Source: Malacoraja senta (lineage: Eukaryota). Taken from it: DNA of 64,000 nt. Made by a program: the position numbers and the translations under genes. Shown one piece after another: positions 5,101 through 56,991 of the stretch (position 1 is the first letter of the stretch; each line of letters starts with the position of its first letter). The notes under the pieces are model-generated. The model was not told where the DNA came from, made no database searches, and saw nothing but the letters and a program-made list of their open reading frames with translations. The stretch covers positions 5,766,001 through 5,830,000 of the forward strand of contig CM075992.1 in NCBI GenBank assembly GCA_038087875.1, in the 5' to 3' direction.

Positions 5101-6980
5101 GTAATATGCAGCCGGCTGACCTCTCAGTTCCAAACTCTGCACTCTGTGGCTATTACACAATTCAATCTGTAGAAAGGTACAGCTTACAACTAAAAAAATT
5201 AACTCATCTCAAAGATAGCATTTGTGTAAGAAATCACAGCATCCAAAGACCATACATACCGTAACACGCATGAACATTACAAAAATAAAACTGTTGACAA
5301 TTATCTTGGATATATTAAATACACACAGCAAGAGCACCTTAATCGTTCTGTAACCGAGTCTTGAATGACCAACTAATGTACATAATGAAATTTACCCACT
5401 AAACTGGAGGTGCACATAATGTTAATTAGAAACCTTTTGCTCAATGATTCCTAATCAGAATATCAATTACTGATATTTCAGTGGAAAAAATACTTTGATT
5501 TCATGACATTTGGATGGGTGGGAGGGGGGGGGGGAGATAGAGAGAGGGAAAGGAGAGCAACTAAAGAACTCCAAAGGTCAAAATTGAAAATGATCTCCAA
5601 GACTAGAAAACAAGCTTCCAGAAAACTTGACTGCACTTTTCCACATTTCAAAATTAATTAGGTTACGAGTCAGCACTGTAGACAATTCCTCTGCAGTCAG
5701 TGGAAGCAATCAGGAACAAGGAAGAGGGGGCTTGGGTCAAGGGGTCCTGTCAAATTGCAGCCCTCAAACAATCTGCAGGGCAGAACTCTTGACTGAATGA
5801 AAGCCTGTGTATTAAACATATTTTAATGTTGTGCAACTTAATAGGCAGATGATAGGATTTTAGGATATGATAGGATTTTAGTTCAAATGTCCAGCAATGA
5901 CTCTTTGTTATGGGTAGTGACAATTAACAAGGTCTGACGTGGTCATATATGCACAACTGGTCTTTTCTGAAAATTATAGTTAAGTAGAAACATCTAGGTG
6001 GTAAATTACAAGACCATCATTTTAAACTACGACTGATGCAAGAGAAAATATACAAGTAAAGTTGGAAATAACCGGCTCCAAGATTAAGGGACAGCCTTGC
6101 AACTAACTAACTGGGCATTTTCTACAATAGTAAAAAATAATGGTACATAATTAAATAGCTTACTTGCTTTAAATGCGAAATCTCACTGAGTCGACGGCCA
6201 TGAAGGTGTAGTAGTAGCACGCAGGATGTAGATAATTGTTTGCCAATTGTAACAGTTGAAAAGGATAAAGATCTGTAGCTCACCAGGTTTTTTCTCCTCC
6301 TTTTGCTGTCCTCTCACTGTTTATATAATCAAATTTAGACAATGCACATGTACCTTACTGCGCAAGAGTCCACAGTGCACATGGAGTTGGGGAATATCTT
6401 GAAACCTGCCCCTTTCACAGCAGATCTGTGTTAGCACCAACCATCTGAAATGCTACACGAACTGCACTCAGGTGAACGCCATGTTTTGTAAACAGCATTC
6501 CAAATGCATGTCCTGACCAGAAATCCTTCATACATTTTTTTTTAGACAGGTGAAGCAAATTTCATTTGCTGGTAGTCAAACGTCGATCTTTCAAAAGACG
6601 AGGTAGAAAAAAAAACAATCCTGCTTTTTCCAAGAGCAAAACAATTTTCTCTGTTGAAGCTGCTTTCTAATTTAAGTGCAACTTAAGCTCTTTTTATGGC
6701 TTTCAATGGTCACTGTCAGCATTATTGCACTTTTTCTATGCAGCTTAAACAGACTAGCGCTAGAATTTCTTCCAGACATGTTGTTCTTTTAACACAAGGA
6801 ACTACTGGTAAAAAGCTCCATTAATCTGGCAAACTGTATGTATTGCAGTGATAATTAGAAGTCACTGGTTGTCGGTTGGAAACTACGATGGGTGGTTTAC
6901 AGAAAGTACGTGGGGCAGAGGGGAAACAGACTTTGCCAGCGCCAGGCTAGCAACAGGCTCAATTACTGAAAGAATTGACG
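2150..6980 (-). other. Putative long 3' UTR of the BRD4 short isoform
   Basis: Follows the read-through stop; ~4.8 kb with no repeat I could recognise; U-rich distal end with ARE nonamer at 2331-2339. Confidence 0.55.
2163..2168 (-). terminator. Putative polyadenylation signal AATAAA (second copy at 2023-2028)
   Basis: TTTATT on + strand; followed on the minus strand by a GT/T-rich stretch (TGTATTTCTGGT); repeats resume below ~1700. Confidence 0.5.
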
Positions 6981-7108
6981 CTAACCTGTTTCAGAGTCGT
7001 TGCTCTCAGAGGAGCTGGAGTCACTGCTACTGTCTGACTCAGAAGAACTGCTGCTGCTTCTCATCCTTGAAGGGCCTCCCACATCCATGCTTACGTCATG
7101 CTTCTCAG
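6981..7108 (-). CDS. BRD4: BRD4 SEED exon (human exon 11 equivalent); internal donor after 6986 or read-through stop at 6981-6983
   Basis: (A)[40 protein letters not shown] then G|GT TAG; ctctttgtacag acceptor. Confidence 0.92.
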
Positions 7109-13090: not shown

Positions 13091-13693
13091 GTTTGAGAAG
13101 GAACTGCAGATGCTGGAAAATCCCAGGTACACAAAAATGCTGGAGAAACTCAGCGGGTGCAGCAGCATCTATGGAGCGAAGGAAATAGGCAACGTTTCGG
13201 GCCGAAACCCTTCTTCAGACTGATGGGGGGTGGGAGGGGGCGGGGAGAAGAAAGGAAAAAGGAGGAGCAGCCCGAGGGCTGAGGGAGAGCTGGGAAGGGG
13301 AGGGGACAGCAAGGGCTAACAGAATTGTGAGAATTCAATGTTCATGCCACCAGGATGCAGACTCCCCAAGCGGAATATGAGGTGCTGTTCCTCCAATTTC
13401 CGGTGGTGCTCACTCTGGCCATGGAGGAGGCCCAGGACAGAGAGGTTGGAAACGGAATGGGAGGGGGAGTTGAAGTGCTGAGCCACCGGGAGGTCAGGTT
13501 GGTTAATGCGGACCGAGCGGAGGTGTTCGCCTAAACGATGGCCAAGCCTACGCTTGGTCTCACCGATGTAGATCAGCTGACATCTAGAGCAGCGTATGCA
13601 ATAGATGAGGTTGGAGGAGATGCAGGTGAACCTCTGTCGCACCTGGAACGATTGCTTGGGTCCTTGAATGGAGATGAGAGGGGAGGCAAAGCG
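13091..13693 (-). mobile_element. 5'-truncated Penelope-like retroelement (Neptune-type): GIY-YIG endonuclease C-terminus plus pseudo-LTR
   Basis: ORF 13316-13642 NLIYCIRCSRCQLIYIGETKR...GEH...PVAQHFN (GIY-YIG with CCHH); TSD ACTATTATAGCTT at 13078-13090 and 13694-13706. Confidence 0.92.
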
Positions 13694-18749: not shown

Positions 18750-19651
18750 GAGAACAAACTTCACCCAAACATATACTGGTTTGGTAAAGAGAAATAATGC
18801 GCTGTCCACAATTTTGCTTTCTGGGACAGTAGGGGGAAAGAGGAACTTGTATGTGTTATCAAATTGATGGCTGCCACATGTATTAAATTGGTGCCTTTGA
18901 TATCCATTTTAATATCAACTCCTCAAATTATTAGTTCTTCGGTTCAGTGTACGAAATTAGAGAAAAGACAGGTCTGAAAATGTAAATGAAAGAATCATGC
19001 TCTCACTTTTACCAATGCATCTCTGGCTTCCAGTTTTAATGTTAAACATTTCCATACAAACAATTTTCCATCAACAGAATTTATGATTTTTAAGTAATTG
19101 TTCACGTAATAATTAAGTAATAATTCACGGCAAGAAATAATGATCTGGAAGAACCAGCATTAAAATTGATTTATCATCATAGGCAGAATACAGGACCACA
19201 TAGAACTCGATTTGTAGCAAAGCTTTGAAAAGGAGGAAAAAAAATCACATCTTACCCGCTGCCTACGATTGCAGTGATTACCTGCAGTACACATCCAGAT
19301 TAAACAAATAAGACCGTTTCAATCTATTTAATCACAAATACTGATGAAATCACCACCATACCTCTCAACTGTATGCTTATTTTTTTTTATTACTGTGACA
19401 CAATATAAAGCTGCACACATAGAAATAGCAGCCAAATGAAACCAATCAAAATCAGGCAATTTACAAATGCTACCAAAAGCCGCATTCTTCTGAAAGCATA
19501 AACCAGAATTCTGCCAATCAACGCATTGCAGTTTGAGAGGTATGTGCACCACAAAATTAAGGCTATTACAAATACGTACAAATTTATTTTAACCTTGGCC
19601 CCAACCTAGGATAACCTAAGGATCTACTTCACAAGGTTGCACTACACCAAC

Positions 19652-19771
19652 CTTTTATGCCTGGTTTCTTCCCAGAGCTCAGCTGGCCGCTAACGTCATG
19701 TAACCTGGTATCCAGCTCACTCTTCGAGTCTAGCTGGAGGTCATCGTTCGATTTCCCTGGGACTTTTTTCA
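19652..19771 (-). CDS. BRD4: Extra BRD4 exon encoding a BRD2/BRD3-type ET-adjacent coiled-coil segment
   Basis: 120 nt, phase 1-1, open: (V)[39 protein letters not shown]; tgtttgcag acceptor, AAG|GTTGGT donor; [11 protein letters not shown] matches the BRD2/BRD3 motif RLQDVSGQL. Confidence 0.88.
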
Positions 19772-22700
19772 CTGCAAACAGCATCACACAACAAGATTTG
19801 GACCAAACACTTTGGTACCATTATACAGGTACAACACAGTGAATAAAAATGACTCTAATTTGGCACATGGGATCAGGTGCAAATTGAAGGAAGGAAAAGC
19901 AGCTAAAGGAAAAAAAAGGATCCATTCATTGTTTGCAACTTGAAAGGCCAATAATCTAAAAGAGAATTTAGCAAATGTTTGGAAGCATGTAGCGAGGTCA
20001 TGATAATTTTGTTTTGTGAAACATAAACCACATTTTAAAAATACTGAAGTATATAGAATGCACAATTCAATTTATTGCCAAAAACATTTGAACCAAAGAG
20101 CTGCTCAGATGATCAGACCAGAAGGAAAGGGAGTGAGGGTTAAAAAAGATTCCTGGCCAGATTATAAATAAGTCAACTTCAAAAAAATAACCATAAAAGG
20201 CACATGAATTGTGAGGAATAAAGAAACAATTTTTACTTTAACCAAACTTGGACCAAGTTAAATTTCATTTTAACCACTTTCACTCATAGTAAAAGGCTAA
20301 TGGTTGAAGCCACTGGTCAACAAAGTTTCTCAACTTCCCCAAACCATATACTAGCTGCCATGACAACCAGAGATTTGCTACGGCAACAGTGGAAATATCC
20401 AGTCTTTTCCTTCAGCGTGGTGAGCATTATAATGAGTTATATGACTCAAAGAAATAGTGTTTCAGTGCACCACTTTTTCTCTTTTTTTTTTTGTTATGAG
20501 AAATATTACCTACAATATTCCCCCCCCCCCCCCATAAAGATTTACTTTTATATCATGACGTCACTACTGAAATTCACGGTTTGCCAAATTCAAAATAAAT
20601 TTAACTGGAGAAGCCAAATCTGGTTCAAGATTAAAAAGAAAATAGTGTACCTCTGAAAACCAGCTGTTGCTCTGATCTCTAGGTTAAGCAGCCCAAAAGA
20701 TGTCAATACCCAACCTGTGTGTGCCCATTCACAAGTCCAATGATGCTGTGACAGTGTAGATCATTTCACAATGATCACACATCCAAAGTAAACAGAAGAT
20801 GATTGTTGTCATAAAAACTGAACATTACAAATCTTCCAACAAAAAAAAATGCAGAACAAACCACCCAAATCAGGGCCTGTTCATGGTGCATAATGAAAAC
20901 ATCATACATTACCAATAATTATATCAAAATTCATCCTCACTGGAATCAGTGAATTAATTGGTTATTTATCTCATTTGCAACTACCAAGTTATCAAAATAC
21001 ATTGAAGCAGATTATCTACTCTTTGAAGTTAATACAGCAAGTCCTTTTCCCCCATCACCATATAAAAATCCTATAATTTTGAATATCAATAGCTTCTGCA
21101 ACAAAGAATAAAATTGTGTCGTATATGTACAGGCAGAGAAATGTGTGTTCAATTTTACACGTTTCTGGACTGATTGGGGAGAAAATTAAGTACGGTAAAT
21201 ACCTGGATCTAATCTAGACCTTACATACAAGTTAGATACTAAGAGCATGCAAATTCAGATATTTATCTCATAGTTTCAAGGTTAAATTACCAGCAGAGAA
21301 AACAGTTACAAAGCAACTGGGTCAAAGTTTCTCAACTTTCCTAAAGCATTTTATAAGACAGTATATTTTTATGTACAATGGCATGCTCCTGGCATTTAGA
21401 ATTTAGAAAATGAAACTGTCAAAATCAGAGCAAGTTTTCAAGGAATGGTGATGCAGAATAATTGTCCATAGTTCTTCTAATTTAAGGATAAACTAGTTGT
21501 CACTAATCACTCAAATTGTAGTTTAGTACATTAAATAATGCTAAAGCAGGCACAGGATGTGTGTTTTACAGGGGAGGACAGGTGGCCAAAACAATATGGT
21601 TGATTTTGCTTAAATCCAAGATTGCCAAAAAGTGTATTTACAATCATATCCTAAGAATTTAAAGCTAATGCACCGCCATGATCATATCGAAGGGCCAGAT
21701 GGCCTACTCCTGCACCTATTTTCTATGTTTCTAACATTAAGGATAGTCATGTATTGATTCTACCCAATCCCATACAGCAAGCCTACGATAGGCCCACAAA
21801 GACAAGAGTACCTATTGTATATATGATTAGCACTGTCTGGTAACATGTACATTCCTAATGCTGTAAATGTACATCTGCCATGGCTTACCTGGAGGATCAC
21901 ATTGTGGGTCTGGCTAAGACTTCACTAAAGTCAGTTCAACTGCACCTGAATTGGGCAAGGATTGGTCTTGTGAAATATTTATTCTCAGAATCACAGTATT
22001 TTGATGTATAATGCGAGCCAGCCAGAATACTGGGGCGAAGTCTAAGAGATTTAGGTAATCTCAAATACCTTGATACTCAAATAAAACCAAGTCAATCTAT
22101 GCAATGTGTTTGACCCACATACGAGTTCCTGACAATGTATCATCCCTATCATCGAGATCGGTTATCACCACCAGTTTGAGATTCTCCCATGATGAAACAT
22201 GCCCTTCCATCTGGGTCAAGAACCCTCAGGATTTTACATTGCATTCAAGTCTCACTCTTCTAAACTCCAGCAGATGCAAGCCAAGCCTACCCAACCTCAT
22301 TTTAATATTTGTCTCATAAACCTCTCTAAGCTGCTTAACATTCTTCATTTCATAAGTTTACTAATGCTGTATGTGTGCTCCAGATGTAGTCCAATAGCCA
22401 ATGTAACTGAAGCATGAACTTTCTACTTGCGTATTCAATGACCCTCGCAATAAACATGAAGATTGTTAGCTTTTCTAATCACTGTGTGCTGGCATACTAA
22501 CCTTTTGAAAAATAATGCATGAGCTCACCCCGATGCCTCTGCATCCTTAAGTTTCACAGAATATGATTTCCTATTTTCACTTTACAAAAACATGACCACT
22601 ACAAAATGACTCATACTTTATATGCTATAAACTATTGGAAATCCTGGTCATTAGATCCCTCATTATAAAGTCCTTGACCGTGACAATTCACTCGTCTTCC

Positions 22701-26324: not shown

Positions 26325-26882
<558 letters not shown>

Positions 26883-33511: not shown

Positions 33512-34084
33512 CTAGAAAGAACAAAGCAAGGATATGAAATCCAACTACCAGCTAAATTGAACAATGCATTAAATCACTTGCATTATCATTCACTTGCATA
33601 AAAAGAGGGAGACTAATGTCAAAACAAGGAGCAATTTCCAGTTGAGGAGCAAGTTCTCAACTAATGACTCATCTTCAGTGTGGAAGGACATATAAGAAAT
33701 CACCAGCTACAAGAGGGAACCCCCCCCCCACTCCTTGGACAATTGGCAGCTGACCAATGACCTGAATGAGTTCTACTGCAGGTTTAAAAGGCAGAAACAT
33801 AACCCAGATATGCCCAAAGGCCGGACAATTTTTCCCTCTACCCTTAAGGTCTGTGCCGAGCAACTGGCAGCAGTCTACACAAACATTTTCAATCAGTCCC
33901 TGCAAACCTGCACTGTCCCTGCCTGCTTCAGAGCCTCCACCATTGTTCCGGTACCCAAAAAACCAAGGATTACTGGTCTTAATGACAACAAGCCTGTCGC
34001 ACTGACCTCTGCAATCATGAAAACCCCTGAAAGACTTGTGCTGGCCCACCTGAAAAGTATCACAAACCCCCTGCTAGATAAATA

Positions 34085-34600
34085 GATCATAGAAACATAC
34101 AAAAATAGATGCGGGAATGGCCATTCAGCCCTTCGAGCCAGCCATTCAATATGATCATGGCTTATCATCTAAAATCAGTACCCAGTTCCTGCTTTTCCCC
34201 CCACATTTAAGTTGATTTAAACGTGCTATATAAATAAAATGTACTTACTTACTTACATCCCTTGATTCCTTTAGCCCTAAGAGCTAAACCTAACTCTCTC
34301 TCGAAAACATCCAGTGAATTGGCCTCCACTGCCTTCTGTGACAGAGAATTCCACAGGTTCACAACTCTCTGGGTGAAGAAATGTTTCCTCATCTCAGTCC
34401 TAAATGGCCCACCCCTTATTCTTAAAGTGCTACCCCTGGTTCTGGACTCCCCCAACATCGGGAACATTTTACCTGCATCTTGCCTGTCCAATCCTTAAAG
34501 AATTTTGTGTCTCTATAAGATCCCCTCTCATCCTTCCAAATTCCAGTGGCTACAAGCCCAGTGGACCCATTCTTTCATTATATGTCAGTCCCACCATCCC
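34085..34600 (-). mobile_element. CR1-like LINE 3' end nested in the Rex1-like LINE
   Basis: GESRTRG...FFTQRVVNLWNSL (ORF 34249-34491). Confidence 0.8.
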
Positions 34601-35284
34601 ATGGAGTCAGTGGATGACGCAGTCAACCTAGGCCTGCACTTCATCCTCCAGCACCTAGACCACCAGAGGACCTATGCAAGGATTCTGTTTGTGGATTTTA
34701 GCTCTTCATTCAACACCATTGTGCCAGAGCTACTACACTCCAAACTCTCCCAGCTGACTGTGCCTCAACCACTCTGTCAGTGGATCACCAACTTCCTGAC
34801 AGGAGCAGCATTTAAGGCTGGGAAAGTACATCTCAGACCCGCTGACCCTCAGCATAGGAGAACTGCAAGGCTGCATACTATCTCCTCTCCTTTACTCTCT
34901 CTACACCAACAACTGCACCTCCACAGACTCCTCTGTCAAGCTTCTCGAGTTTGCGGATGACATAACCCTGATTGGGCTGATCCAGGATGGGGAGGAATCT
35001 ACCTACAGACAGGAAATGACACAGCTGGTGTCCTGGTGCCATCGCAACAACTTGGAACTCAATGTTCTTAAGACATTGGAATTGATTGTGGTCTTTAGGA
35101 GAGCTCCCCCTCCCCTCCCTCCACTCACCATCAACAACACTACAGTCACAACTGTAGAGTCATTTAAGTTCCTCGGAACCATCATCTCCAAGAACCACCA
35201 TCGACTACATAGTCAAAAAAGACCCACAGAGGAAGTACTTCCCGCGGCAGTTAAGGAAACACAACCTGCCACAGGCAATGATGG

Positions 35285-35508
35285 TGTAGGAAAGAACGGC
35301 AGATACTGGTTTAAATCGAAAGTAGATACAAAATGCTGGAGTAACTCAGTGGGACAGGCAGCATCTCTGGAGAGAAGGAATGGGTGACGTTTAGGGTCGA
35401 GACCCTTCTCCACAGTCTGAAGAAGGGTCTCGACCCGAAACTTCACCCATTCCTTCTCTCCAGAGATGCTGCCTGTCCCACTGAATTACTCCCGCATTTT
35501 GTGTCTAC
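35285..35508. mobile_element. Penelope-like fold-back nested in the Rex1-like LINE
   Basis: TSD CAGGCAATGATGG at 35272-35284 and 35509-35521. Confidence 0.88.
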
Positions 35509-37616: not shown

Positions 37617-38038
<422 letters not shown>

Positions 38039-39035: not shown

Positions 39036-40580
39036 CTTATTCTAAAATTGTTTTGTTTTTTCTTCAAATCATCAATCTACGCACAACACCCCATAATAAA
39101 AATGCGAAAACAGGTGTTTAGACATTTTACAAAGTAATTAAAATGAAATAACTGAAATATCACATTTACATAAGTATTCAGACCCTTTACTGAGTACTTT
39201 GTTGAGGCACCTTTGGCAGCGATTACAGCATCAAGTCTCCTTGGGTATGACGCTACAAGCTTGGCACACCTGTATTTGGGTAATTTCTCCCATTCTTCTC
39301 TGTAGATCCTCTCAAGCTCTGTCAGGTTGGATGGGGAGCGTCAATGCACAGCTATTTTCAGGTCCCTCCAGAGATGTTCGATCGGGTTCAAGTCCAGGCT
39401 CTGGCTGGGCCACTCAAGGACATTCAGAGTCTTGTCACGAAGCTACTCCTGCGTTGTCTTGGTTGTGTGCTTAGGGTCGTTTTCCTGTTGGAAGGTGAAC
39501 CTCCGCCACAGTCTGAGATCCAGAACGCTCTGGAGCAGGTTTTCATCAAAGATCTCTCTGTACTTTACTTCGTTCATCATTCCCTCGATCCTGACTAGTC
39601 TCCCAGTTCCTGCCGCTGAAAAACATCCCCACAGCATGATGCTGCCACCACCATGCTTCACTGTAGGTATGGTATTGGCCAGGTGATGAGCGGTGCCTGG
39701 TTTCCTCCAGATGTGACGCTTGGCATCCAGGCCAAAGAGTTCAATCTTGGTTTCATCAGACCAGAGAAACTTGTTTCTCATGCCTTTTGGCAAACGCCAA
39801 GCGGGCTGTTATGTGCCTTTGACTGAGGAGTGGCTTCCGTCTGGCCACTCTACCATAAAGGCCTGATTGGTGGAGTGCTGCAGATATAGTTGTCCTTCTG
39901 GAAGGTTCTCATCTCCACAGAGGAACTCTAGAGCTCTATCAGAGTGACCATTGGGTTCTTGGTCACCTCCCTGACCAAAGCCCTTTCCCCCCGATTGCTC
40001 AGATTGGCCGGGCGGCCAGCTCTATGAAGAGTCCTGGTGGTTCCAATGTTCTTCCATTTAAGAATGGCGGAGGTCACTGTGCTCTTCGGGACCTGCAATG
40101 CTGCAGAAATTGTTTTATATCCTACCCCAGATCTGTGTCTCCACACAATCCTGTCTCGGATGTCTACGGACAATTCCTTCATCTTCATGGCTTGGTTTTT
40201 GCTCTGACATGCACTGTCAACTGTGGGATCTTACATAGACAGGTGTGTGCCTTTCCAAATCATATCCAATCAATTTAATTTATCACTGGTGGACTCCAAT
40301 CAAGTTGTAGAAACATCTCAAGGATAATCAATGGAAACAGGATGAATCTAAGCTCAATTTTGAGTGTCGTAGCAAAGCTTATGTAAATACTTATGTAAAT
40401 GTGATATTTCAGTTATTTCTTTAATTTGCAAAAATTTCTAAACACCTGTTTTCGCTTCTTCATTCTGGGGTATTGTGTGCAGATTGATGATTTAAAAAAT
40501 GAATTTAATTTTGAAATCCATGTTAAAATAAGGCTGTAACGTAACAAAATGTGAAAAAGTGAAGGGGTCTGAATACTCTC
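39036..40580 (-). mobile_element. Tc1-like DNA transposon with long inverted repeats and pseudogenised DD34E transposase
   Basis: Paired-like HTH (39928-40188), [43 protein letters not shown]; inverted repeats ~39040-39190 and ~40370-40580; stops and frameshifts. Confidence 0.93.
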
Positions 40581-42792
40581 TATGTAGGAAGGAATAACTA
40601 GTTACAAGTTAGAATGCCTCATCCACAAACAGCCTTGTCCAGTTTGGTGATATGCTCCTTAAGGTTGTTGGAACTGCACCCATCTAAGCAGGGAGAAAGT
40701 AGTCTTCTGGCTTGTGTTTTGTGGATGGTGAAAAGATTTGGGAACTCAAACGTGAACAAGCCATTCCTGGGCGATTTCCCATATTGTTAGGGTCGGCACC
40801 AGTATAAAGACTGCATTGGAGCCGAGAGCTGTGCTTAACTCGAGTACCATAGTGCAGTGGACTGTGACACATGATATAGTCTATGCAGGTAGACACAAAA
40901 TGCTGGAGTAACTCAGCGGGACAGGCAGCATCTCAGGAGAAAATTGAATTGGTTAAATATTGTTTTCTATGGTGCTGAGAATCACAGGAATTGGGGACGG
41001 CCAATTGATTTGGCACTTCTGACTGAATGCAGTTGCGATACTTCCATCTCAAGTTTAACACCAAATCCCTAGTCTATGAAGGATCGGGGCGTACTTGGAG
41101 TCATCTCCTCCATTCAGATATTTAATTGCCCGCCACTATTTACAACTAGATGAGACAAGAGTATAATTGTTGTTGTTTTGCAACTTCATTAGATTGGAAT
41201 CTCATCTACCATATTCTGGTGTCTCTCTTACACTGCTCATTGAACCATATGCCATCATTATATGCACTGGTCCCAGCTGGCAAATACTGAAGCACGGGCC
41301 TTTGATATACCCATTCCCCATCCATTATGGTGCTTTATCCTACACTGGCCTCAATATTGGTTTGCCCATTCCATGCACTAAACTGAAATATAAATCACCA
41401 ACAAGTGCTGCAATGTTACATCAGGAATTATTTTTGTTGCATCATTGTAATGTAGGAAACAAGGCAGACAAATTCCAATTGCTTTATTGCAAAAACAGCA
41501 CCACTCAAACTGTATATGGAAAAAATTCTCTGCTCATTACAAATGTTTTTTCTAAGTTCACCTTCCTCATTATGAACCTTTGTCTAAAAAATGACTACTT
41601 TTGATTAAGGGCAGTTGGACTCATAATTATCATATATAAACTAAACACTTAAACGTGTGCAGCACTAGAAGATCAACTAGATTCCTTAAAGAGTCAAACT
41701 GTTGCTGTTAAAATAAATTGAGAGAATGGGATAGCATTTGGTTTTGGTTTGTAGATATTAGCCAATAAAATAATTCAAACTAACAGTTATTCTACGAAGG
41801 TTTAAGATGTCCAAATGTCCAAAAAATGAAATGCTCAACAAATGGACAATTTGGCCAGCAAATAATTAAACAGAAATACCTACCAACATATTTATTTTGT
41901 GTTTGAAGAATTGCTACTTAAGTTTCATTTATTTTTTTACTCACTCTGTTAATACAAGTTGAAAGTAACATGTGACATTTTGGAATCTATAACCTCCAAC
42001 TGGTGGTGAAGGGGGAACTCCAAAATATGGCATGGTGCCCCATACAGACTACCCTCCCTAAACGAAGAGCTAAAATTTCAAGTTACTGAAAAAAAGGCAG
42101 CATTCATTGTTACATCAACAGTCCATCGCAATTTTTTTTCCTGTGTTCGCTTTATCCTTTAAATACCAACGATGTCCCCGCATTCTTTGTATTTCAGAAT
42201 TTATGGGGATTATGCCGATTTTTAAAACTGTTTATTTCACACATAACTTATCCAAAGTTTAACTAGCTGGAAGTATATTAAACACTTCAAAATATGAAAA
42301 TCGTTATCTTCCACAATTAAACTGGAGGTTATGGGAGTTGAAAGGGGGGTGCAACATGCAAGAAATTCTATTAATCCAGTTTAAAACTGACACCTATTTC
42401 ACTGCCTCGATTCTTCTCTCTTGGTTACCCAAGTTTTAGAATGACACAACACAATTAATCGTGCTGGCGGGAAAAATAACATGGCCAAGGCACTAAGAAG
42501 AAAATATTGGCAAAAGCATCCCAAGACAACGATCAGAAATAAAAGCACTCAACTTACCCTAGTGCACATTTGCTTCCAACACCATGTATAAAAGGCTCAT
42601 CCTTGTTATTGAAACAACCTTCAAAACCTACTCTGCAAATGTCCTAACAACTTTAATGCAGGTGTATAATCCAGTTCTCTCACACTCACCAAGAAAATCA
42701 TTCCGCATGAGATGAGACTGAGAAAGGAGACTGCATGTGGAAACAAAAAATCTACACTGTGATAAAATATACATCGTCACTTCGCAGCAAAA

Positions 42793-42992
42793 NNNNNNNN
42801 NNNNNNNNNNNNNNNNNNNNNNNNNNNNNNNNNNNNNNNNNNNNNNNNNNNNNNNNNNNNNNNNNNNNNNNNNNNNNNNNNNNNNNNNNNNNNNNNNNNN
42901 NNNNNNNNNNNNNNNNNNNNNNNNNNNNNNNNNNNNNNNNNNNNNNNNNNNNNNNNNNNNNNNNNNNNNNNNNNNNNNNNNNNNNNNNNNNN
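42793..42992. other. Assembly gap (200 N)
   Basis: Run of N; a SINE head abuts it at 42993-43028. Confidence 1.
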
Positions 42993-44470
42993 GGCAGCAG
43001 CTCTACCAGCTGCGCCACTATGCCACCCCATATGTTAATATGGAAGAGTTTCATTCTGAAAAGTCAAGTTCACTTCACAAACCATATGATAAACTGCTAC
43101 AAATCTACACAAGCCTGAATTGACAGGACAAATCTAGTGGCTGCACAAAAATATTAGAAATAGGAACAGGAATAGGCCATATAGTTCCCTATTCATCGAT
43201 ACAATGGCTGATGTCCCATCTCAGCACACTATCCCTATATTCCTTGATGCTCAAATTCTGCTCTATTTCACATGAACATAACCAAGCTGGTACAGTTCTC
43301 CAGGGTAGAAATACCCAAGATTCAACACTCTCCAAAGGATTACACGACTGTTTATATTTACACGGTAGTTTATATTTGTTTAGTTTAAAGATACAGCAAG
43401 AAAACAGGCCCTTCGGCACACCACGTCCATGCTGACCAGCGATCCAAAACATCCTAACCCGTTGCCTATCTATCCCCTTGACAGATGCTGAATTACCCCA
43501 GCACCTTGCGTTTTGCAAGTTTGTAACTTGGCACGCTGCTTGACATTTTCTTCTGTATTTACCAATTTGAATGACATATGACGTTGAACAAAGGAAAAAA
43601 TTGACATGTGCTATTCCATAACCAATCTAATTTTGCAGCAGGGCACACAATCAGTTTGGATTATTATTCTGAATTGTATTTATGAACATAACAACACTGC
43701 CAGATAGAGCTGATTATTAAATGCAGAATTATAATGCCACAATTAATACTTTCTCTTCACGAAAAAAACTGGCTGCAAGGAAATCAGTCACATTAAGCTC
43801 AAGTTTAAAAAAAACTGACAACAATCATATAATCGGTATGTATGTCATAGCATACATGCATATCAATCAAGCAGAAGCGAGCAAATGGGTCCATGCTTGC
43901 TCCACTATTTAATAAGGGCCCGGTTGATTTGACCATAAACCTCAACTCTGCGTTCCCATTTATGCAGCTTCATTTATTATTTCATCCATGTGCCAATAGA
44001 CATAGAAACATAGAAAAATAGGTGCAGGAGTAGGCCATTCGGCCCTTCGAGCTACATACCTAAAAAAATATTCAAAGACCACTTGAACTGCCCTTTGGAA
44101 AGGAATTCCAAAAACCTACAATCCCCTGAGAAAATACATTTGCTTCATCTCGCCAACACGCAGGAGTTCAACCATTTTCTAGGTCCCATTTGGTCTCCGT
44201 AGTGACCACATTAGAATTCAAAAAGACCAGAATACCGTAAAGTGCACCAAGGTCTCAGCCCATGCAACTTCTAATATTTTCAACTTTGGGATTCTGATAT
44301 AACATTGTCTTAAGACAGACAATGAAATAAAGCACAGGTTATTTTAAGCATTGATAAAAGATTCAATACAAGACGACGGACACCTCAAAGTAATCAGAGC
44401 TGCTTCAATGGTGTTTCATAATACAAGATCTAAAATTACAGCTGAAAGACACTATAAAGTATAGGCTTAC

Positions 44471-44901
44471 TTTAATAGTACAGAGATCCATTGGGTGTTT
44501 TATAATGTCATGATAATCATGCAGTCCCAAGGCGTCTACGTCCACAGGTTTGTAGAAGGGCCAGGCATAGGCTGCGTGCTTCTTGGCGAACATATCCTTT
44601 AAAATCCCAGTGCAGCACTTCAACTGTTCTGAAACGTTTCCACTGCCGACCACAAGCTCCCCGCCACCACCATCACCACCACTTCCGACAATCCCAACAC
44701 CTCCACCCGCACTCTTCTCAGATGAAGTTGCTGCTGTGAGTCTGGAATCTCTTTCTTTGCAGGTTTGGGAGGTCTGCCACTTCTGGAAGGGATCTTTGCA
44801 GGTTTGGGTTCAGTCATTAACGGAGAAGACTCTCGACTCTTCACTGCAACGTTGGTTGTTGGAGTTGTTGTATCAGCTTTCCTTTTCACACCCTTTTTAT
44901 G
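44471..44901 (-). CDS. BRD4: BRD4 exon 6 (motif A and first half of BD2), with an apparent 1-nt frameshift
   Basis: [16 protein letters not shown]...KKEIPDSQQ then, in another frame, SEKS...[32 protein letters not shown]...HPMDLCTIK; GTAAGC donor; 431 nt where 432 keeps frame. Confidence 0.93.
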
Positions 44902-53727: not shown

Positions 53728-56712
53728 AATTAATATTTTAGCTCAGTTGATTGCAGCAAAATTAGGAGGTCATGATCAGGCACAATTTCAATATTTTTAT
53801 ATTCTCTTACAACCTAGAAGGAATCCATTCAACCCAGAAACTATATAAGTTCTCAGAATTCTCATCAATCAAAATCCCCATTTCCACCAAACCATACAAC
53901 CCTCTCATACACACCCATTTACACCAATGCCCCTCTCAGAACCCAGATTTACCCACCATCAACAATTGCAATTTATAGTCACTGATTAGTAAAATATCCA
54001 GCATGTCTTTGAAATAGGCGAGGAAATGGAAGTGCCCAAGGACACTCACATGGTCACAGAGAGAATGCACAAACTCCACACAGGCAGCAATGGTCAGAAT
54101 TGAACCTTTGTTGAAGCTGTGAGACAGATACACTTCTTGCTGCACCATTGTGCTAGATTGGCCATTTAATTCATCTTGCTTTATGAAAATAGCCCAATTT
54201 ACCACCAACAATACTGGTATGATATGAAGAAATTCAGAATGTCTCAAGGACTTAAAAAGGTCACGTGAAGATTAAAAATTCTCAAATTCCTCTCTTCTCT
54301 TAAAATTCAATTTGATTTAAAATGACAAACCTGGATTGTATGATGTGTAAGCAAAGAGCAGATAAAGGTACCACTTATACAAATAGCCCCAATATAAAAA
54401 AGACAATTTTACCAATTTAAAAAACCCCCAAAATGACTTCTGTGCCACATGTACACAAATCAATCAAAAAAAAAATCAATGATTTTTCCACGTCTCCCTA
54501 ATCATTACACCAAGTTATTCCTCTCTCTTTCAGCATAATAAAGCAACTATTTCCAAAGGGTTTACTCATTTCTGAATGTACACTCTCATTCCAATGTACC
54601 CACTGGAAATACAACAACCATTTCTACCTCCTCTCTCCCACCAACCAAGGTCTCCAACACACTTTCACAAGTTAAGAGAATAATTAACCGATACATAAAA
54701 ACAAAGTGCAGGAGTAACTCAGCAGGTCAGGCAGCATCTCTGGATAACATGAATAGGTGACGTATCGGGTTGGTAGCTCATGGGAAGTATTTAAAGTGGA
54801 GCTGGATAAATATTGGAAAAATCAAGGAATGGAGGGGTATGGAAAATGGCAAACAGGAGGGGCCGATGTCAGCATAGATTAGCCATGATGATATTAAGTG
54901 ATGGTACAAGCGTGGAGGCCTATTTTCTTGCATGTTAACATCCTCGAGCCCTAACCACCAAATACTCTGCTCTTGGCCTCATATGAAACGCTTTCCAAGT
55001 ACAAGGAGTGGCCCATTTTTCCAAATCAGAGCCTTCCAGATTCATTACTCGAGTTCAATTATTTCAGATCATAAACAATTTTGATAAGGGTGTTAGGGGT
55101 TATGGGGAGATAGCAGGAGAATGGGGTTGAGAGGGAAAGGTAGATCAGCCCTGATTGAATGGCATAGTATTGATGCGCCGAATGGCCTAATTCTGTTCCT
55201 ATAACTTATGCTTATGAATTTCAGCAACTGTGTTATGCTCTTTTGCCATTTCAAATATTGTGCTTCCTTTACATACCTATTCACACAACCTTTTTCTTTT
55301 GAATTTACACTAACTCATTTGTATCCTTGTCTTTTAATCTCTTATAAATCCATCCCAACAGAGCTTCCTTATGTTCTCTCCTCCCCTTGTAATGAAGTAT
55401 TCAACTTTTTTCAGTTCTGAAAGGTTTATCAATGATCTAAAATGTTAACCATTTCTCTCCTCCTTCCCGACTGGGTACTTGTTGAATTTTTTCTCCTGAA
55501 TTCATAGCAAAGAATTAACAAAGCTAGACCTTTCACACCCATAAACTATGTTTCAGGCACAAGAAAAATAACTTCTCATTAGTCAGCAATTAAAAATAAA
55601 TTTAAAAAAAACAGCTGCTGAAAGGTTTAAAAAAATAGATATTCTGAAGAAATGTCATCAACATGAAACATCCCCTTTCCATAAATGCTGTCTGACCACA
55701 GAATATTTCCAGCATTTTCTAATCTCATTTTTGAAAAACCCTCATGATTTGAAGTCCAAATATTTGATGCCAAATTACTTTAAGCGAGCTCATCCAATTT
55801 GTTTTAAGATCTTTCAGTGAATAGCAGCACTTGAGCAAAGGGATAGTCGAAGGAACAGCCATCCTCTGTTCGGCTGGCACAGCGTCCACTGAAACCAAAC
55901 TGGAACAAGCATCTTTGCACAACTGGCAACTAAGGTTCAAATAAGATCAATGAGAGAAAACACACAGGAAATAAAATAACGTGGGCACTAAAAGACTGCA
56001 AGAGGTATAGAATAACCTCAAAGTGCATCTGTTAACATGAGGGGAAAATCATTTAAATCATGCTCAAAATGAATGCATGCAGCCATCAACAAAATGGATA
56101 AATGAACAGCGATATGTAGAGGTGAGTGGATTTGATACAATGGTCATTAGAAACATAACCAAAATTGTGACTGAAATGGAGAACAAAATATTACAGGGTA
56201 TTTAGCTTGAATAAAATAGAAAAGGATGCAGGACAGTCCTAATAACAAAGTATAAAAAGGCAGTTTCCAATCACCTTATTTATTATGATAAATGGAGGAC
56301 CAAAAGTTGAATCGTGTGCCCTATCGACAAATTGAAAATTATGGGCCAATGACCTCTTTTTAACACAGCACCTAACATTATCTAGTTGCTGTTTTCTGAC
56401 AATTGCAATATAGAAAATGGCAGAAGCCAGTCCGCATTTTTGGCTGCTCTGCCCCATGGAAAGGCACTTCCCTACAAACCAGGAACTGGGAAGACGAGGA
56501 AATTAAAGGCAAACAGGGCAGGAATACCCCAAAGTGATCGTGATAAAGCTATGAGGAAGAATACAAAGGGAATATGACCCAAAACAAAATTAGCTTGAAT
56601 TTAGTAACTTCCTCAACTTATATTACAATATTAGTGACCCGGTCAGTTTACATTTCATCCACTGCTTGAAATATAAACTGACTGGGTCACTAGAAAGGAA
56701 AGTACAACTTAC

Positions 56713-56991
56713 AGGTAGGTTTAATTTCGAAGCATCCACAGGCTGTTGGAAAGGCCAAGCAAACTGGTGTTTCCATATTGTCTTCAGGAGCGCTTTTGAC
56801 AGAAACTGGAGCTGGTTTGTCAGCCGTTTGGATCGGTTGGGATTGGATGTTTCAGGAGGGGAAGGATTACCAGCAATGCTTTGTTGGGGTTGAGCTTGTG
56901 ACTGTGTTGAAGACATCTGTGTGCTTTCTAGGCCATCCCCCATCGCTGGTAGTTTTCTTAGTCTCTTCCCTGGGCCACTCTCACTCGACAT
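56713..56991 (-). CDS. BRD4: BRD4 exon 2 coding part (start codon, N-terminus, start of BD1 with WPF shelf); exon begins at 57025 with 34 nt of 5' UTR
   Basis: [10 protein letters not shown]...[21 protein letters not shown], 93 codons, then GTAAGT; acceptor ttcttgttacag ending at 57026. Confidence 0.97.

What the first reader, a model, noticed from the sequence alone, without database searches (positions are those of the whole stretch)
19652..19771. BRD4 retains a BRD2/BRD3-type ET-adjacent coiled-coil exon that mammalian BRD4 lacks
Seen: a 120-nt open exon in the 19 kb interval between the ET and SEED exons, with a good acceptor (tgtttgcag), a GTTGGT donor and phase 1-1, so it can be included or skipped without shifting frame. 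It encodes [40 protein letters not shown] and is invisible to the ORF track. Established (from memory): BRD2 ([37 protein letters not shown]) and BRD3 ([31 protein letters not shown]) have this segment right after ET, where it has been described as a functional coiled-coil module, while human BRD4 goes directly from RKPQ to AEKV. Inference: the exon is ancestral to the BET paralogues, survives here in diverged form (E to D changes, lost lysines, weaker helix propensity) and may be a cassette that switches BRD4 between BRD2/3-like and mammalian-like ET modules.
Basis: partly seen in the sequence, partly recalled or inferred. Interest (0 to 1): 0.85.

Follow-up and report, generated by a model that had tools for sequence, protein, structure and literature searches.

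The report
Optional BRD2-like helix exon in skate BRD4
The BRD4 gene of this cartilaginous fish keeps a small, optionally spliced exon for the helical segment that sits after the ET domain in BRD2 and BRD3. I did not find it in any mammal, bird or bony-fish BRD4 I could check, so this animal makes BRD4 both with and without that segment.

Summary
Window 19652-19771 (minus strand) is a 120-nt open exon in phase 1-1, with acceptor tgtttgcag and donor GTTGGT. It lies between the ET exon (ends 26525) and the SEED exon (starts 7108) of a BRD4 orthologue.

It is therefore a real cassette exon. In one polyA library inclusion is roughly one third to three quarters. It is the form assembled in another organism's run.

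A profile of the post-ET coiled-coil (CC) segment, built from BRD2-type, BRD3-type and invertebrate BET sequences without this one, hits the exon at E=4e-13. The next best hit in the 64 kb is E≈1. Exon phase and neighbouring exons match those of a BRD2-type and an invertebrate BET locus, so the exon is ancestral.

Four bony-vertebrate BRD4 loci and six or more spliced BRD4 products lack it. The hydrophobic seam is kept, but charged positions that are near-invariant elsewhere have changed.

Any function, such as BRD2-like TFIID contact, is inferred only. I could not reach annotated shark or skate BRD4 proteins, so the exon may already sit in automatic annotations. I found no paper describing it. 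Earlier notes of this scan did not report it.

The parts
19652..19771 (-). 120-nt cassette exon, phase 1-1. It encodes (V)[39 protein letters not shown], the BRD4 copy of the BET post-ET coiled-coil (CC) segment.
   Evidence: Sequence. CC profile E=4e-13. polyA RNA-seq depth is about 20 on the exon and 0 in the flanking bins. AlphaFold2 models a helix over residues 7-31.
19772..19796 (-). Pyrimidine/GT-rich tract and AG acceptor (tcttgttgtgtgatgctgtttgcag).
   Evidence: In run X24, 18 reads carry the end of the ET exon joined exactly here. Contigs of X1, X4 and X7 show the same joint.
19646..19651 (-). Weak donor gttggt, with T at +3.
   Evidence: In X24, 15 reads continue from 19652 into the start of the SEED exon, as does the 2664-nt X1 contig.
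26525..26811 (-). ET-domain exon. It ends ...RKKARKPQ + G (phase 1) with donor gtgagt, and is the upstream partner of both splice choices.
   Evidence: Related ORFs carry the Pfam BET domain. It sits in the BRD4 clade 99/96.
6986..7108 (-). SEED exon (A)[40 protein letters not shown], phase 1-1. It is the downstream partner of both splice choices.
   Evidence: It is 57.5% identical to the deer BRD4 SEED exon, E=3e-8. At its acceptor, X24 reads carry mostly the ET-exon end (skipping form), while the X1 contig carries the cassette-exon end.

Best explanation
This is a real, alternatively spliced coding exon of BRD4 in a cartilaginous fish; earlier notes of this scan call the genome a skate. It is the BRD4 descendant of the ancestral BET exon that encodes the short helical 'coiled-coil' segment immediately after the ET domain. 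That exon is kept in BRD2-type, BRD3-type and invertebrate BET sequences seen here (in BRDT too, from memory) and is missing from every bony-vertebrate BRD4 I could sample.

The exon is 120 nt in phase 1-1 and has a weak GTTGGT donor. The spliceosome either includes it, giving ET-CC-SEED as in BRD2/3, or skips it, giving ET-SEED as in mammals, without changing frame. These points are shown: the exon anatomy, both splice forms in RNA, homology to the CC segment, near-identity of the exon in RNA runs under at least 15 coded organism labels, and absence from four bony-vertebrate BRD4 loci.

What follows is inferred. The 25-residue amphipathic helix keeps the hydrophobic seam (L12, L14, L19, L23, V26, L30) and probably still acts as a protein-contact module next to ET. 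In mammalian BRD2 the CC together with ET confers BRD2-type activity, and the C-terminal fragment containing it binds TFIID. The included isoform may therefore give skate BRD4 a BRD2/3-like contact that the skipped isoform lacks. The changed charged positions (E14D, K15S, E20D, R/K21T, Q24H) suggest that partner or affinity has shifted.
For: Anatomy.

RNA, inclusion: polyA RNA-seq run X24 gives depth about 20 on the exon and 0 beside it. 18 reads join ET to the exon and 15 join the exon to SEED. Contigs of X1, X4 and X7, from three other coded organisms, show the same joints.

RNA, skipping: at the SEED acceptor, the 18 X24 reads have the ET-exon end as consensus with agreement 0.71, which indicates a mixture of about 2:1 ET-type to CC-type. 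The X1 contig (2664 nt, depth 104) is ET-CC-SEED. X4 and X7 contigs break exactly at the exon borders, as expected at a splice bubble.

Conservation: the exon's sampled words are fully held by RNA runs under at least 15 coded organism labels. In X4 and X7 the exon shows 0-1 differences over 112-122 nt, against 3 in the adjoining 75 nt of intron and 4 in the next 30.

Homology: E=4e-13 with a profile that excludes this sequence; 37-59% identity to 11 CC segments; invariant E18, L19, L23, G28, L30, K35.

Same exon design: a BRD2-type locus reads ...CCC TAT G|gt, ag|TG AAG AAA ... AAG G|gt, ag|CG GAG AAG. An invertebrate-type BET locus is laid out the same way.

BRD4 orthology.

Absence elsewhere.

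Structure: helix over residues 7-31, pLDDT 74-86 in the core.

Function of the CC in BRD2: PMC8446420 summarising Werner et al. 2020, and bioRxiv 10.1101/2025.09.20.676678.
Against: The inclusion level is poorly constrained. Depth suggests about 0.8, junction counts about 0.5, and the SEED-acceptor consensus about 0.35. The tool may also silently drop reads that resemble human DNA.

Only one raw-read library was available, and its tissue is unknown.

The skate segment alone changes five charged positions that are near-invariant in all other CC segments. That could mean relaxed constraint rather than a new specificity.

The only amino-acid difference I could read between species is one non-synonymous change (S to T in X1). 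No dN/dS could be computed.

A monomer AlphaFold helix says nothing about coiled-coil pairing.

No BRDT sequence was in the tree.

Sampling of bony vertebrates was limited to one mammal, one unnamed tetrapod-type contig and two ray-finned-fish-type loci, plus predicted proteins. Amphibians, lungfish, coelacanth, gar, bichir, lamprey and holocephalans were not examined.
Confidence: 0.8

Rival explanations
1. The exon is a decaying relic that is still recognised by the spliceosome. Inclusion is tolerated noise, and the extra 40 residues have no function of their own.
For: Five charged positions that are near-invariant in every other CC segment are changed only here. The donor is weak. The skipped, mammal-like form is abundant.
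Against: Inclusion is high rather than marginal: depth is close to that of the neighbouring constitutive exon, and it is the assembled form in X1. The reading frame is open and the hydrophobic seam is intact. The exon is near-identical in RNA runs under at least 15 coded organism labels, and it is better conserved than the adjoining intron.
Confidence: 0.12
2. The exon was acquired recently in the skate lineage, by gene conversion or exon transfer from BRD2 or BRD3, rather than retained from the ancestral BRD4.
For: None of the four bony-vertebrate BRD4 loci shows even a relic. Retention therefore requires at least one loss, with no trace found so far.
Against: The exon is only 37-59% identical to every BRD2-type, BRD3-type or invertebrate CC segment. 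Those segments are much closer to each other, sharing a consensus that is near-invariant at 18 of about 40 positions. A recent transfer should look like its donor. The exon also sits at the ancestral position with the ancestral phases.
Confidence: 0.04
3. The gene is not the BRD4 orthologue but a BRDT- or BRD3-like paralogue, for which a CC exon would be unremarkable.
For: No BRDT sequence could be put in the tree. The C-terminal CTM exons lie outside the window, since the next exon is not in it.
Against: The ET exon is 87-93% identical to its best matches, which include the BRD4-named bird and deer proteins. It sits in a 99/96 clade with them and with fish genes carrying BRD4_CDT, apart from BRD2- and BRD3-type rows. 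The skipped junction RKPQ|AEK.DV and the SEED exon match deer BRD4. The exon after SEED begins E-V-P-P-K-T-K-H-G, like mammalian BRD4-long E-M-A-P-K-S-K.
Confidence: 0.03

Closest known systems
Post-ET coiled-coil (CC) domain of BRD2 and BRD3 (Werner et al. 2020, J Biol Chem 295:1898, as summarised in PMC8446420 and PMC11335234; TFIID-binding C-terminal fragment of BRD2 in bioRxiv 10.1101/2025.09.20.676678)
   Same: It sits directly after ET and before the Ser/Asp/Glu-rich SEED stretch. It is a separate phase 1-1 exon. It shares the motif GKS..(D/E)L.L....EL..RL.DVSGQL.S.KKP and a predicted helix of about 25 residues.
   Different: It lies in BRD4, not BRD2 or BRD3. It is optional rather than, as far as is known, constitutive. 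The conserved EKK.ELE(K/R)RLQ charge pattern is replaced by [11 protein letters not shown]. No functional data exist for it.
Mammalian BRD4 long and short isoforms
   Same: Orthologous gene. The skipped skate isoform has the same ET-RKPQ|AEK-SEED junction. A contig reads through the SEED donor, as in the mammalian short isoform.
   Different: In the deer locus and in the mammal-type transcripts seen here, mammalian BRD4 has only a 1.07-kb ET-SEED intron with no recognisable CC exon. The skate intron is 19.4 kb and holds the exon.
BRDT (from memory: human BRDT has ET, a CC-like segment ...[24 protein letters not shown]..., SEED and a C-terminal P-TEFb-binding motif)
   Same: One BET protein combines a post-ET CC segment with a BRD4-type C-terminal motif, as the included long skate isoform would.
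   Different: It is a different paralogue, testis-restricted in mammals. Its CC is not known to me as a cassette. This comparison could not be tested with the tools.

Membership tests
BET post-ET coiled-coil (CC) segment | Lies immediately C-terminal to the ET domain and N-terminal to the SEED stretch | tested here: met
   RNA joints ET(26525)->19771 and 19652->SEED(7108).
BET post-ET coiled-coil (CC) segment | Sequence homology to the CC segments of BRD2, BRD3 and invertebrate BET | tested here: met
   A profile built without this sequence scores E=4e-13, 46.7 bits. tblastn with BRD3-type P0002 gives E=5e-6. Six columns are invariant.
BET post-ET coiled-coil (CC) segment | Encoded by its own exon in phase 1-1, between an ET exon ending ...KP(Q/Y)+G and an exon starting with AEK | tested here: met
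   The window compared with BRD2-type L002 and invertebrate-type L001.
BET post-ET coiled-coil (CC) segment | Amphipathic helix with a heptad-like hydrophobic seam | tested here: met
   AlphaFold2 models a helix over residues 7-31. L12, L14, L19, L23, V26 and L30 align with the hydrophobic columns of all other CC segments.
BET post-ET coiled-coil (CC) segment | Conserved charge pattern EKK.ELE(K/R)RLQ | tested here: not met
   The skate has [11 protein letters not shown]. E14D, K15S, E20D, R/K21T and Q24H fall at columns that are at least 90% conserved in the other 11 rows.
BET post-ET coiled-coil (CC) segment | Self-association or partner binding (TFIID; BRD2-type activity together with ET) | not testable with these tools
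   Known only for mammalian BRD2.
BRD4 orthologue | ET region groups with BRD4 rather than BRD2 or BRD3 | tested here: met
   Clade of 11 rows with support 99/96. The skate rows lie outside a 97/84 clade of bony-vertebrate BRD4. No BRDT row was available.
BRD4 orthologue | BRD4-type SEED exon and continuation into the long isoform | tested here: met
   The SEED exon is 57.5% identical to deer BRD4, E=3e-8. The loose end after SEED reads E-VPPKTKHGS, against EMAPKSK in P0131.
BRD4 orthologue | C-terminal P-TEFb-binding motif (Pfam BRD4_CDT) | not testable with these tools
   The exon after SEED is not in the window.
Cassette (skipped/included) exon | Both inclusion junctions and the skipping junction are present in RNA | tested here: met
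   In X24, 18 and 15 inclusion-junction reads. At the SEED acceptor, 18 reads have the ET end as consensus, agreement 0.71.
Cassette (skipped/included) exon | Length divisible by three, with no stop in frame | tested here: met
   120 nt, open in the used frame.
Cassette (skipped/included) exon | Regulated (tissue- or stage-dependent) inclusion | tested here: inconclusive
   X1 assembles only the included form, while X24 shows both. Tissues and species are coded, and contigs drop minor forms.

The most novel reading that the evidence does not exclude
Skate BRD4 is a living intermediate in the split of BET functions. By splicing one 120-nt exon it toggles between a form that carries the ancestral ET-adjacent CC module, able like BRD2/3 to contact TFIID and support initiation, and a mammal-like form without it. 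The loss of this exon in bony vertebrates would then be the step that made BRD4 an elongation-only factor.
Probability: 0.15. Interest if true: 0.75.

Novelty: new variant of a known kind. Interest (0 to 1): 0.5.

Why it matters
In mammals the CC segment is one of the few features that separate BRD2/BRD3 from BRD4. Added with ET, it gives BRD4-short BRD2-like activity (Werner 2020, via PMC8446420). The BRD2 C-terminal fragment containing it binds TFIID (bioRxiv 10.1101/2025.09.20.676678). The authors of that preprint propose that BRD4 lost an ancestral initiation function after gaining its P-TEFb-binding tail.

A natural BRD4 that still carries the segment, and carries it as an optional exon, supplies a natural pair of isoforms to test that idea. 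It also places the loss, provisionally, after cartilaginous fishes split from bony vertebrates. It is also a caution for annotation: a 120-nt exon in a 19-kb intron is easily missed.

Tried and rejected
(1) phmmer of the 39-aa peptide against 1.84 billion cluster representatives gave only 7 hits, all BRD2-type, BRD3-type or invertebrate CC exons. There was no second BRD4-type CC. The short query puts even true relatives near the threshold, so this is weak evidence of absence.

(2) The search for homologous proteins with the 52-aa ORF found no candidate.

(3) I tried to reach full-length shark or skate BRD4 proteins by aligning window exons to a BRD3-type scaffold. MAFFT scattered the short rows, so those alignments were not searched. 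The tool's length filter (0.55-1.75 times the query) kept annotated BRD4 (about 1400 aa) out of reach. I therefore could not see whether the exon is in existing annotations.

(4) Searches with the ET exon and with an ET+SEED profile returned mostly genomic read-through ORFs. They did yield the spliced bird, deer, mammal-type and salmonid BRD4 fragments and the loci used as controls.

(5) Two apparent relics in tetrapod introns were rejected. DLSGRLPSG in the deer intron scores at chance level, E about 1. KKPPKK in L009 comes from an A/C homopolymer run.

(6) I first took L001 for BRD2. Its ET (RELESYVASCL) and CC ([23 protein letters not shown]) match mite and beetle sequences, so I now treat it as invertebrate-type BET.

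(7) Pfam has no family for the CC segment.

(8) Werner et al. 2020 (PMC7029111) is not held in the library, so it is cited through reviews.

(9) The organisms of the sequencing runs are coded. 'At least 15 organism labels' cannot be turned into a taxonomic range.

Full report
**What is there.** The minus strand of the window carries a BET-family gene. Its first coding exon is at 56623-56991. Bromodomain-2 exons lie at 44405-44653 and 37880-38032. An ET-domain exon ends at 26525, and a Ser/Asp/Glu-rich SEED exon lies at 6986-7108. It is 120 nt long. It is preceded by a pyrimidine/GT-rich tract ending tgtttgcag and followed by gttggt. It is open in the frame set by a phase-1 G at the end of the ET exon. 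Inclusion gives [50 protein letters not shown]. Skipping gives RKPQ-A-EKHDV. Both are in frame, because the ET exon and the cassette both end with a phase-1 G.

**It is transcribed and spliced, and it is optional.** RNA runs that hold about 120 nt of an 801-nt query were found for several coded organisms. With the exon alone as query, runs under at least 15 coded organism labels hold all its sampled words.

I laid one polyA RNA-seq run kept as raw reads (X24) and three runs kept as contigs on 19000-20500.
- X24 depth is about 20 on the exon and zero in the adjoining bins.
- 18 X24 reads run off the acceptor into the reverse complement of ...TGTTTACGAAAGAAAGCGAGGAAACCTCA, the end of the ET exon.
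- 15 X24 reads run off the donor into CTGAGAAGCATGACGTAAGCATGGATGTGG, the start of the SEED exon.
- Contigs of X1, X4 and X7 show the same joints.

Laying the same runs on the SEED exon showed the other form.
- At the SEED acceptor, the 18 X24 reads have the ET-exon end as consensus with agreement 0.71. The two possible upstream sequences share 5 of 30 letters, so this corresponds to about two thirds ET->SEED and one third cassette->SEED.
- In X1 the 2664-nt contig (depth 104) is ET-cassette-SEED.
- In X4 and X7 the contigs stop exactly at the exon borders, as assembly graphs do at a splice bubble.

Estimates of inclusion in X24 disagree: about 0.8 from depth, about 0.5 from all junction counts, and about 0.35 from the SEED acceptor alone. 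Numbers are small, and the tool may drop reads that resemble human DNA. I claim only that both forms are substantial there and that inclusion predominates in X1.

**It is the BET coiled-coil exon.** A BRD3-type protein from the protein search (P0002) finds the exon by tblastn at E=5e-6 with 50% identity. The closest sequences among 1.84 billion cluster representatives are CC exons of BRD2-type, BRD3-type and invertebrate BET genes.

In an alignment of twelve CC segments, the skate peptide is 37-59% identical to the others. It shares the invariant E18, L19, L23, G28, L30 and K35. A profile built from the other eleven scores the exon 46.7 bits, E=4e-13, among 3410 six-frame pieces of the window, with the next best at E about 1.

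The exon design is also shared.
- In a BRD2-type locus the ET exon ends CCC TAT G|gt. The CC exon runs ag|TG AAG AAA ... AAG G|gt. The next exon starts ag|CG GAG AAG, which reads AEK.
- An invertebrate-type BET locus has the same phase 1-1 exon.
- The skate reads CAA G|gt, ag|TG AAA AAA ... AAA G|gt, ag|CT GAG AAG.

Position, phases and neighbours all match, so the exon predates the vertebrate BET paralogues.

**The gene is BRD4.** The ET exon is 87-93% identical to its best matches, which include the bird and deer proteins named BRD4. In a maximum-likelihood tree it sits in a clade supported 99/96 with those proteins and with two fish genes whose loci also encode Pfam BRD4_CDT. BRD2-type, BRD3-type and invertebrate rows fall elsewhere. 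The skate rows branch outside a 97/84 clade of bony-vertebrate BRD4. The SEED exon matches deer BRD4 (E=3e-8). The transcript continues after SEED with E-VPPKTKHGS, like mammalian BRD4-long EMAPKSK. No BRDT sequence was available for the tree, and the C-terminal exons lie outside the window.

**BRD4 of bony vertebrates lacks the exon, as far as sampled.** Spliced products go straight from ET to SEED in two birds (Acanthisitta, Turdus), in deer, in several mammal-type transcripts and in a salmonid. I fetched four BRD4 loci and searched their ET-SEED introns with the CC profile and with tblastn.
- Deer: intron of 1065 nt.
- An unnamed tetrapod-type contig: about 1.56 kb.
- A compact fish-type gene with BRD4_CDT: about 150 nt.
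- A second fish-type gene with BRD4_CDT: about 1.5 kb.

Nothing scored better than E=0.19. Two short look-alikes were chance or low-complexity matches. Amphibians, lobe-finned fishes, early ray-finned fishes, jawless fishes, sharks and chimaeras were not examined by name. Run organisms are coded, and the protein tool's length filter kept annotated full-length BRD4 out of reach.

**Is it constrained?**

For constraint:
- The frame is open.
- All hydrophobic seam positions (L12, L14, L19, L23, V26, L30) are kept.
- AlphaFold2 models one helix over residues 7-31, with pLDDT 74-86 in the core.
- In two other organisms the exon differs at 0-1 of 112-122 nt. The adjoining intron differs at 3 of 75 nt and then at 4 of the next 30.

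Against, or pointing to a changed role:
- Five charged positions that are at least 90% conserved in all other CC segments are changed only here: EKK.ELE(K/R)RLQ has become [11 protein letters not shown].
- The one amino-acid difference I could read between species is a conservative S to T.

**How it most likely works.** What is shown is a splice choice at a weak donor that adds or omits a 40-residue segment. The segment contains a 25-residue amphipathic helix and lies between ET and SEED.

What follows is inferred from the literature on mammalian BRD2. [quoted passage not shown] 2020 as summarised in PMC8446420; the CC upstream of SEED is also noted in PMC11335234). The BRD2 C-terminal fragment containing the CC is needed for TFIID binding (bioRxiv 10.1101/2025.09.20.676678). 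The included skate isoform may therefore keep a BRD2/3-like contact that the skipped isoform lacks, possibly with altered specificity. That preprint proposes that BRD4 lost an ancestral initiation function after gaining its P-TEFb-binding tail. A BRD4 with an optional CC would be the kind of intermediate this idea predicts. None of this was tested here.

**Novelty.** The CC segment and its absence from mammalian BRD4 are known. From memory, BRDT already combines a CC-like segment with a BRD4-type tail, so the combination is not unprecedented. I found no paper describing a CC exon in any BRD4 or its use as a cassette. Automatic annotations of skate or shark genomes may well contain it, and I could not check. 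I rate it a new variant of a known kind, of moderate interest.

**Earlier scan notes.** Notes on other pieces of this genome call it a skate. I did not verify that. A note on this window proposes a short BRD4 isoform made by read-through of the SEED donor. An X1 contig does run from the SEED exon through the donor to at least 6500, which agrees with it, while the X24 polyA reads show none.

Noticed in passing
window 6500-6985 (-): An X1 contig (2158 nt, depth 14) continues from the SEED exon through its donor (G|gttagc) into the intron. The X24 polyA library shows zero depth there.
   Followed up: partly
P0146, P0101, P0151 (proteins): These are BRD3-type ORFs (KSCLQKKQRK...) in which ET is followed directly by the Ser-rich tail with no CC segment. 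CC-less or CC-skipped forms may therefore also exist for BRD3-type genes in some species. The symmetric phase 1-1 exon would allow that in every paralogue.
   Followed up: no
window 19102-19458: Low-depth X24 reads (up to 3.5x, several mismatches) lie in the intron downstream of the cassette exon, separate from it. They are probably a transcribed repeat or a related copy elsewhere.
   Followed up: no
window 13316-13642 (-), 39443-40188 (-), 33675-35400: The BRD4 introns hold transposon-derived ORFs: a GIY-YIG-like ORF (...LIYIGETKRRLGHRLGEH...), Tc1/mariner-like transposase pieces, and reverse-transcriptase-like ORFs. Recurrent fragments such as 'KKGLDPKRHPFLLSRDAACP' occur many times across the window.
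   Followed up: no
window about 42790-43040: A run of N (assembly gap or masked stretch) lies inside a BRD4 intron. I left it untouched.
   Followed up: no
P0002 and P0143: Two database ORFs are assembly artefacts. P0002 repeats its ET-CC block twice. P0143 joins a BRD4-type N-terminal part to a BRD3-type end, and it misplaces itself in the BRD4 clade of the tree.
   Followed up: partly
L011 17552-18484: A Tc1-type transposase ORF (HTH_Tnp_Tc3_2, DDE_3) sits inside the fish BRD4 gene, between the SEED region and the BRD4_CDT exon.
   Followed up: no
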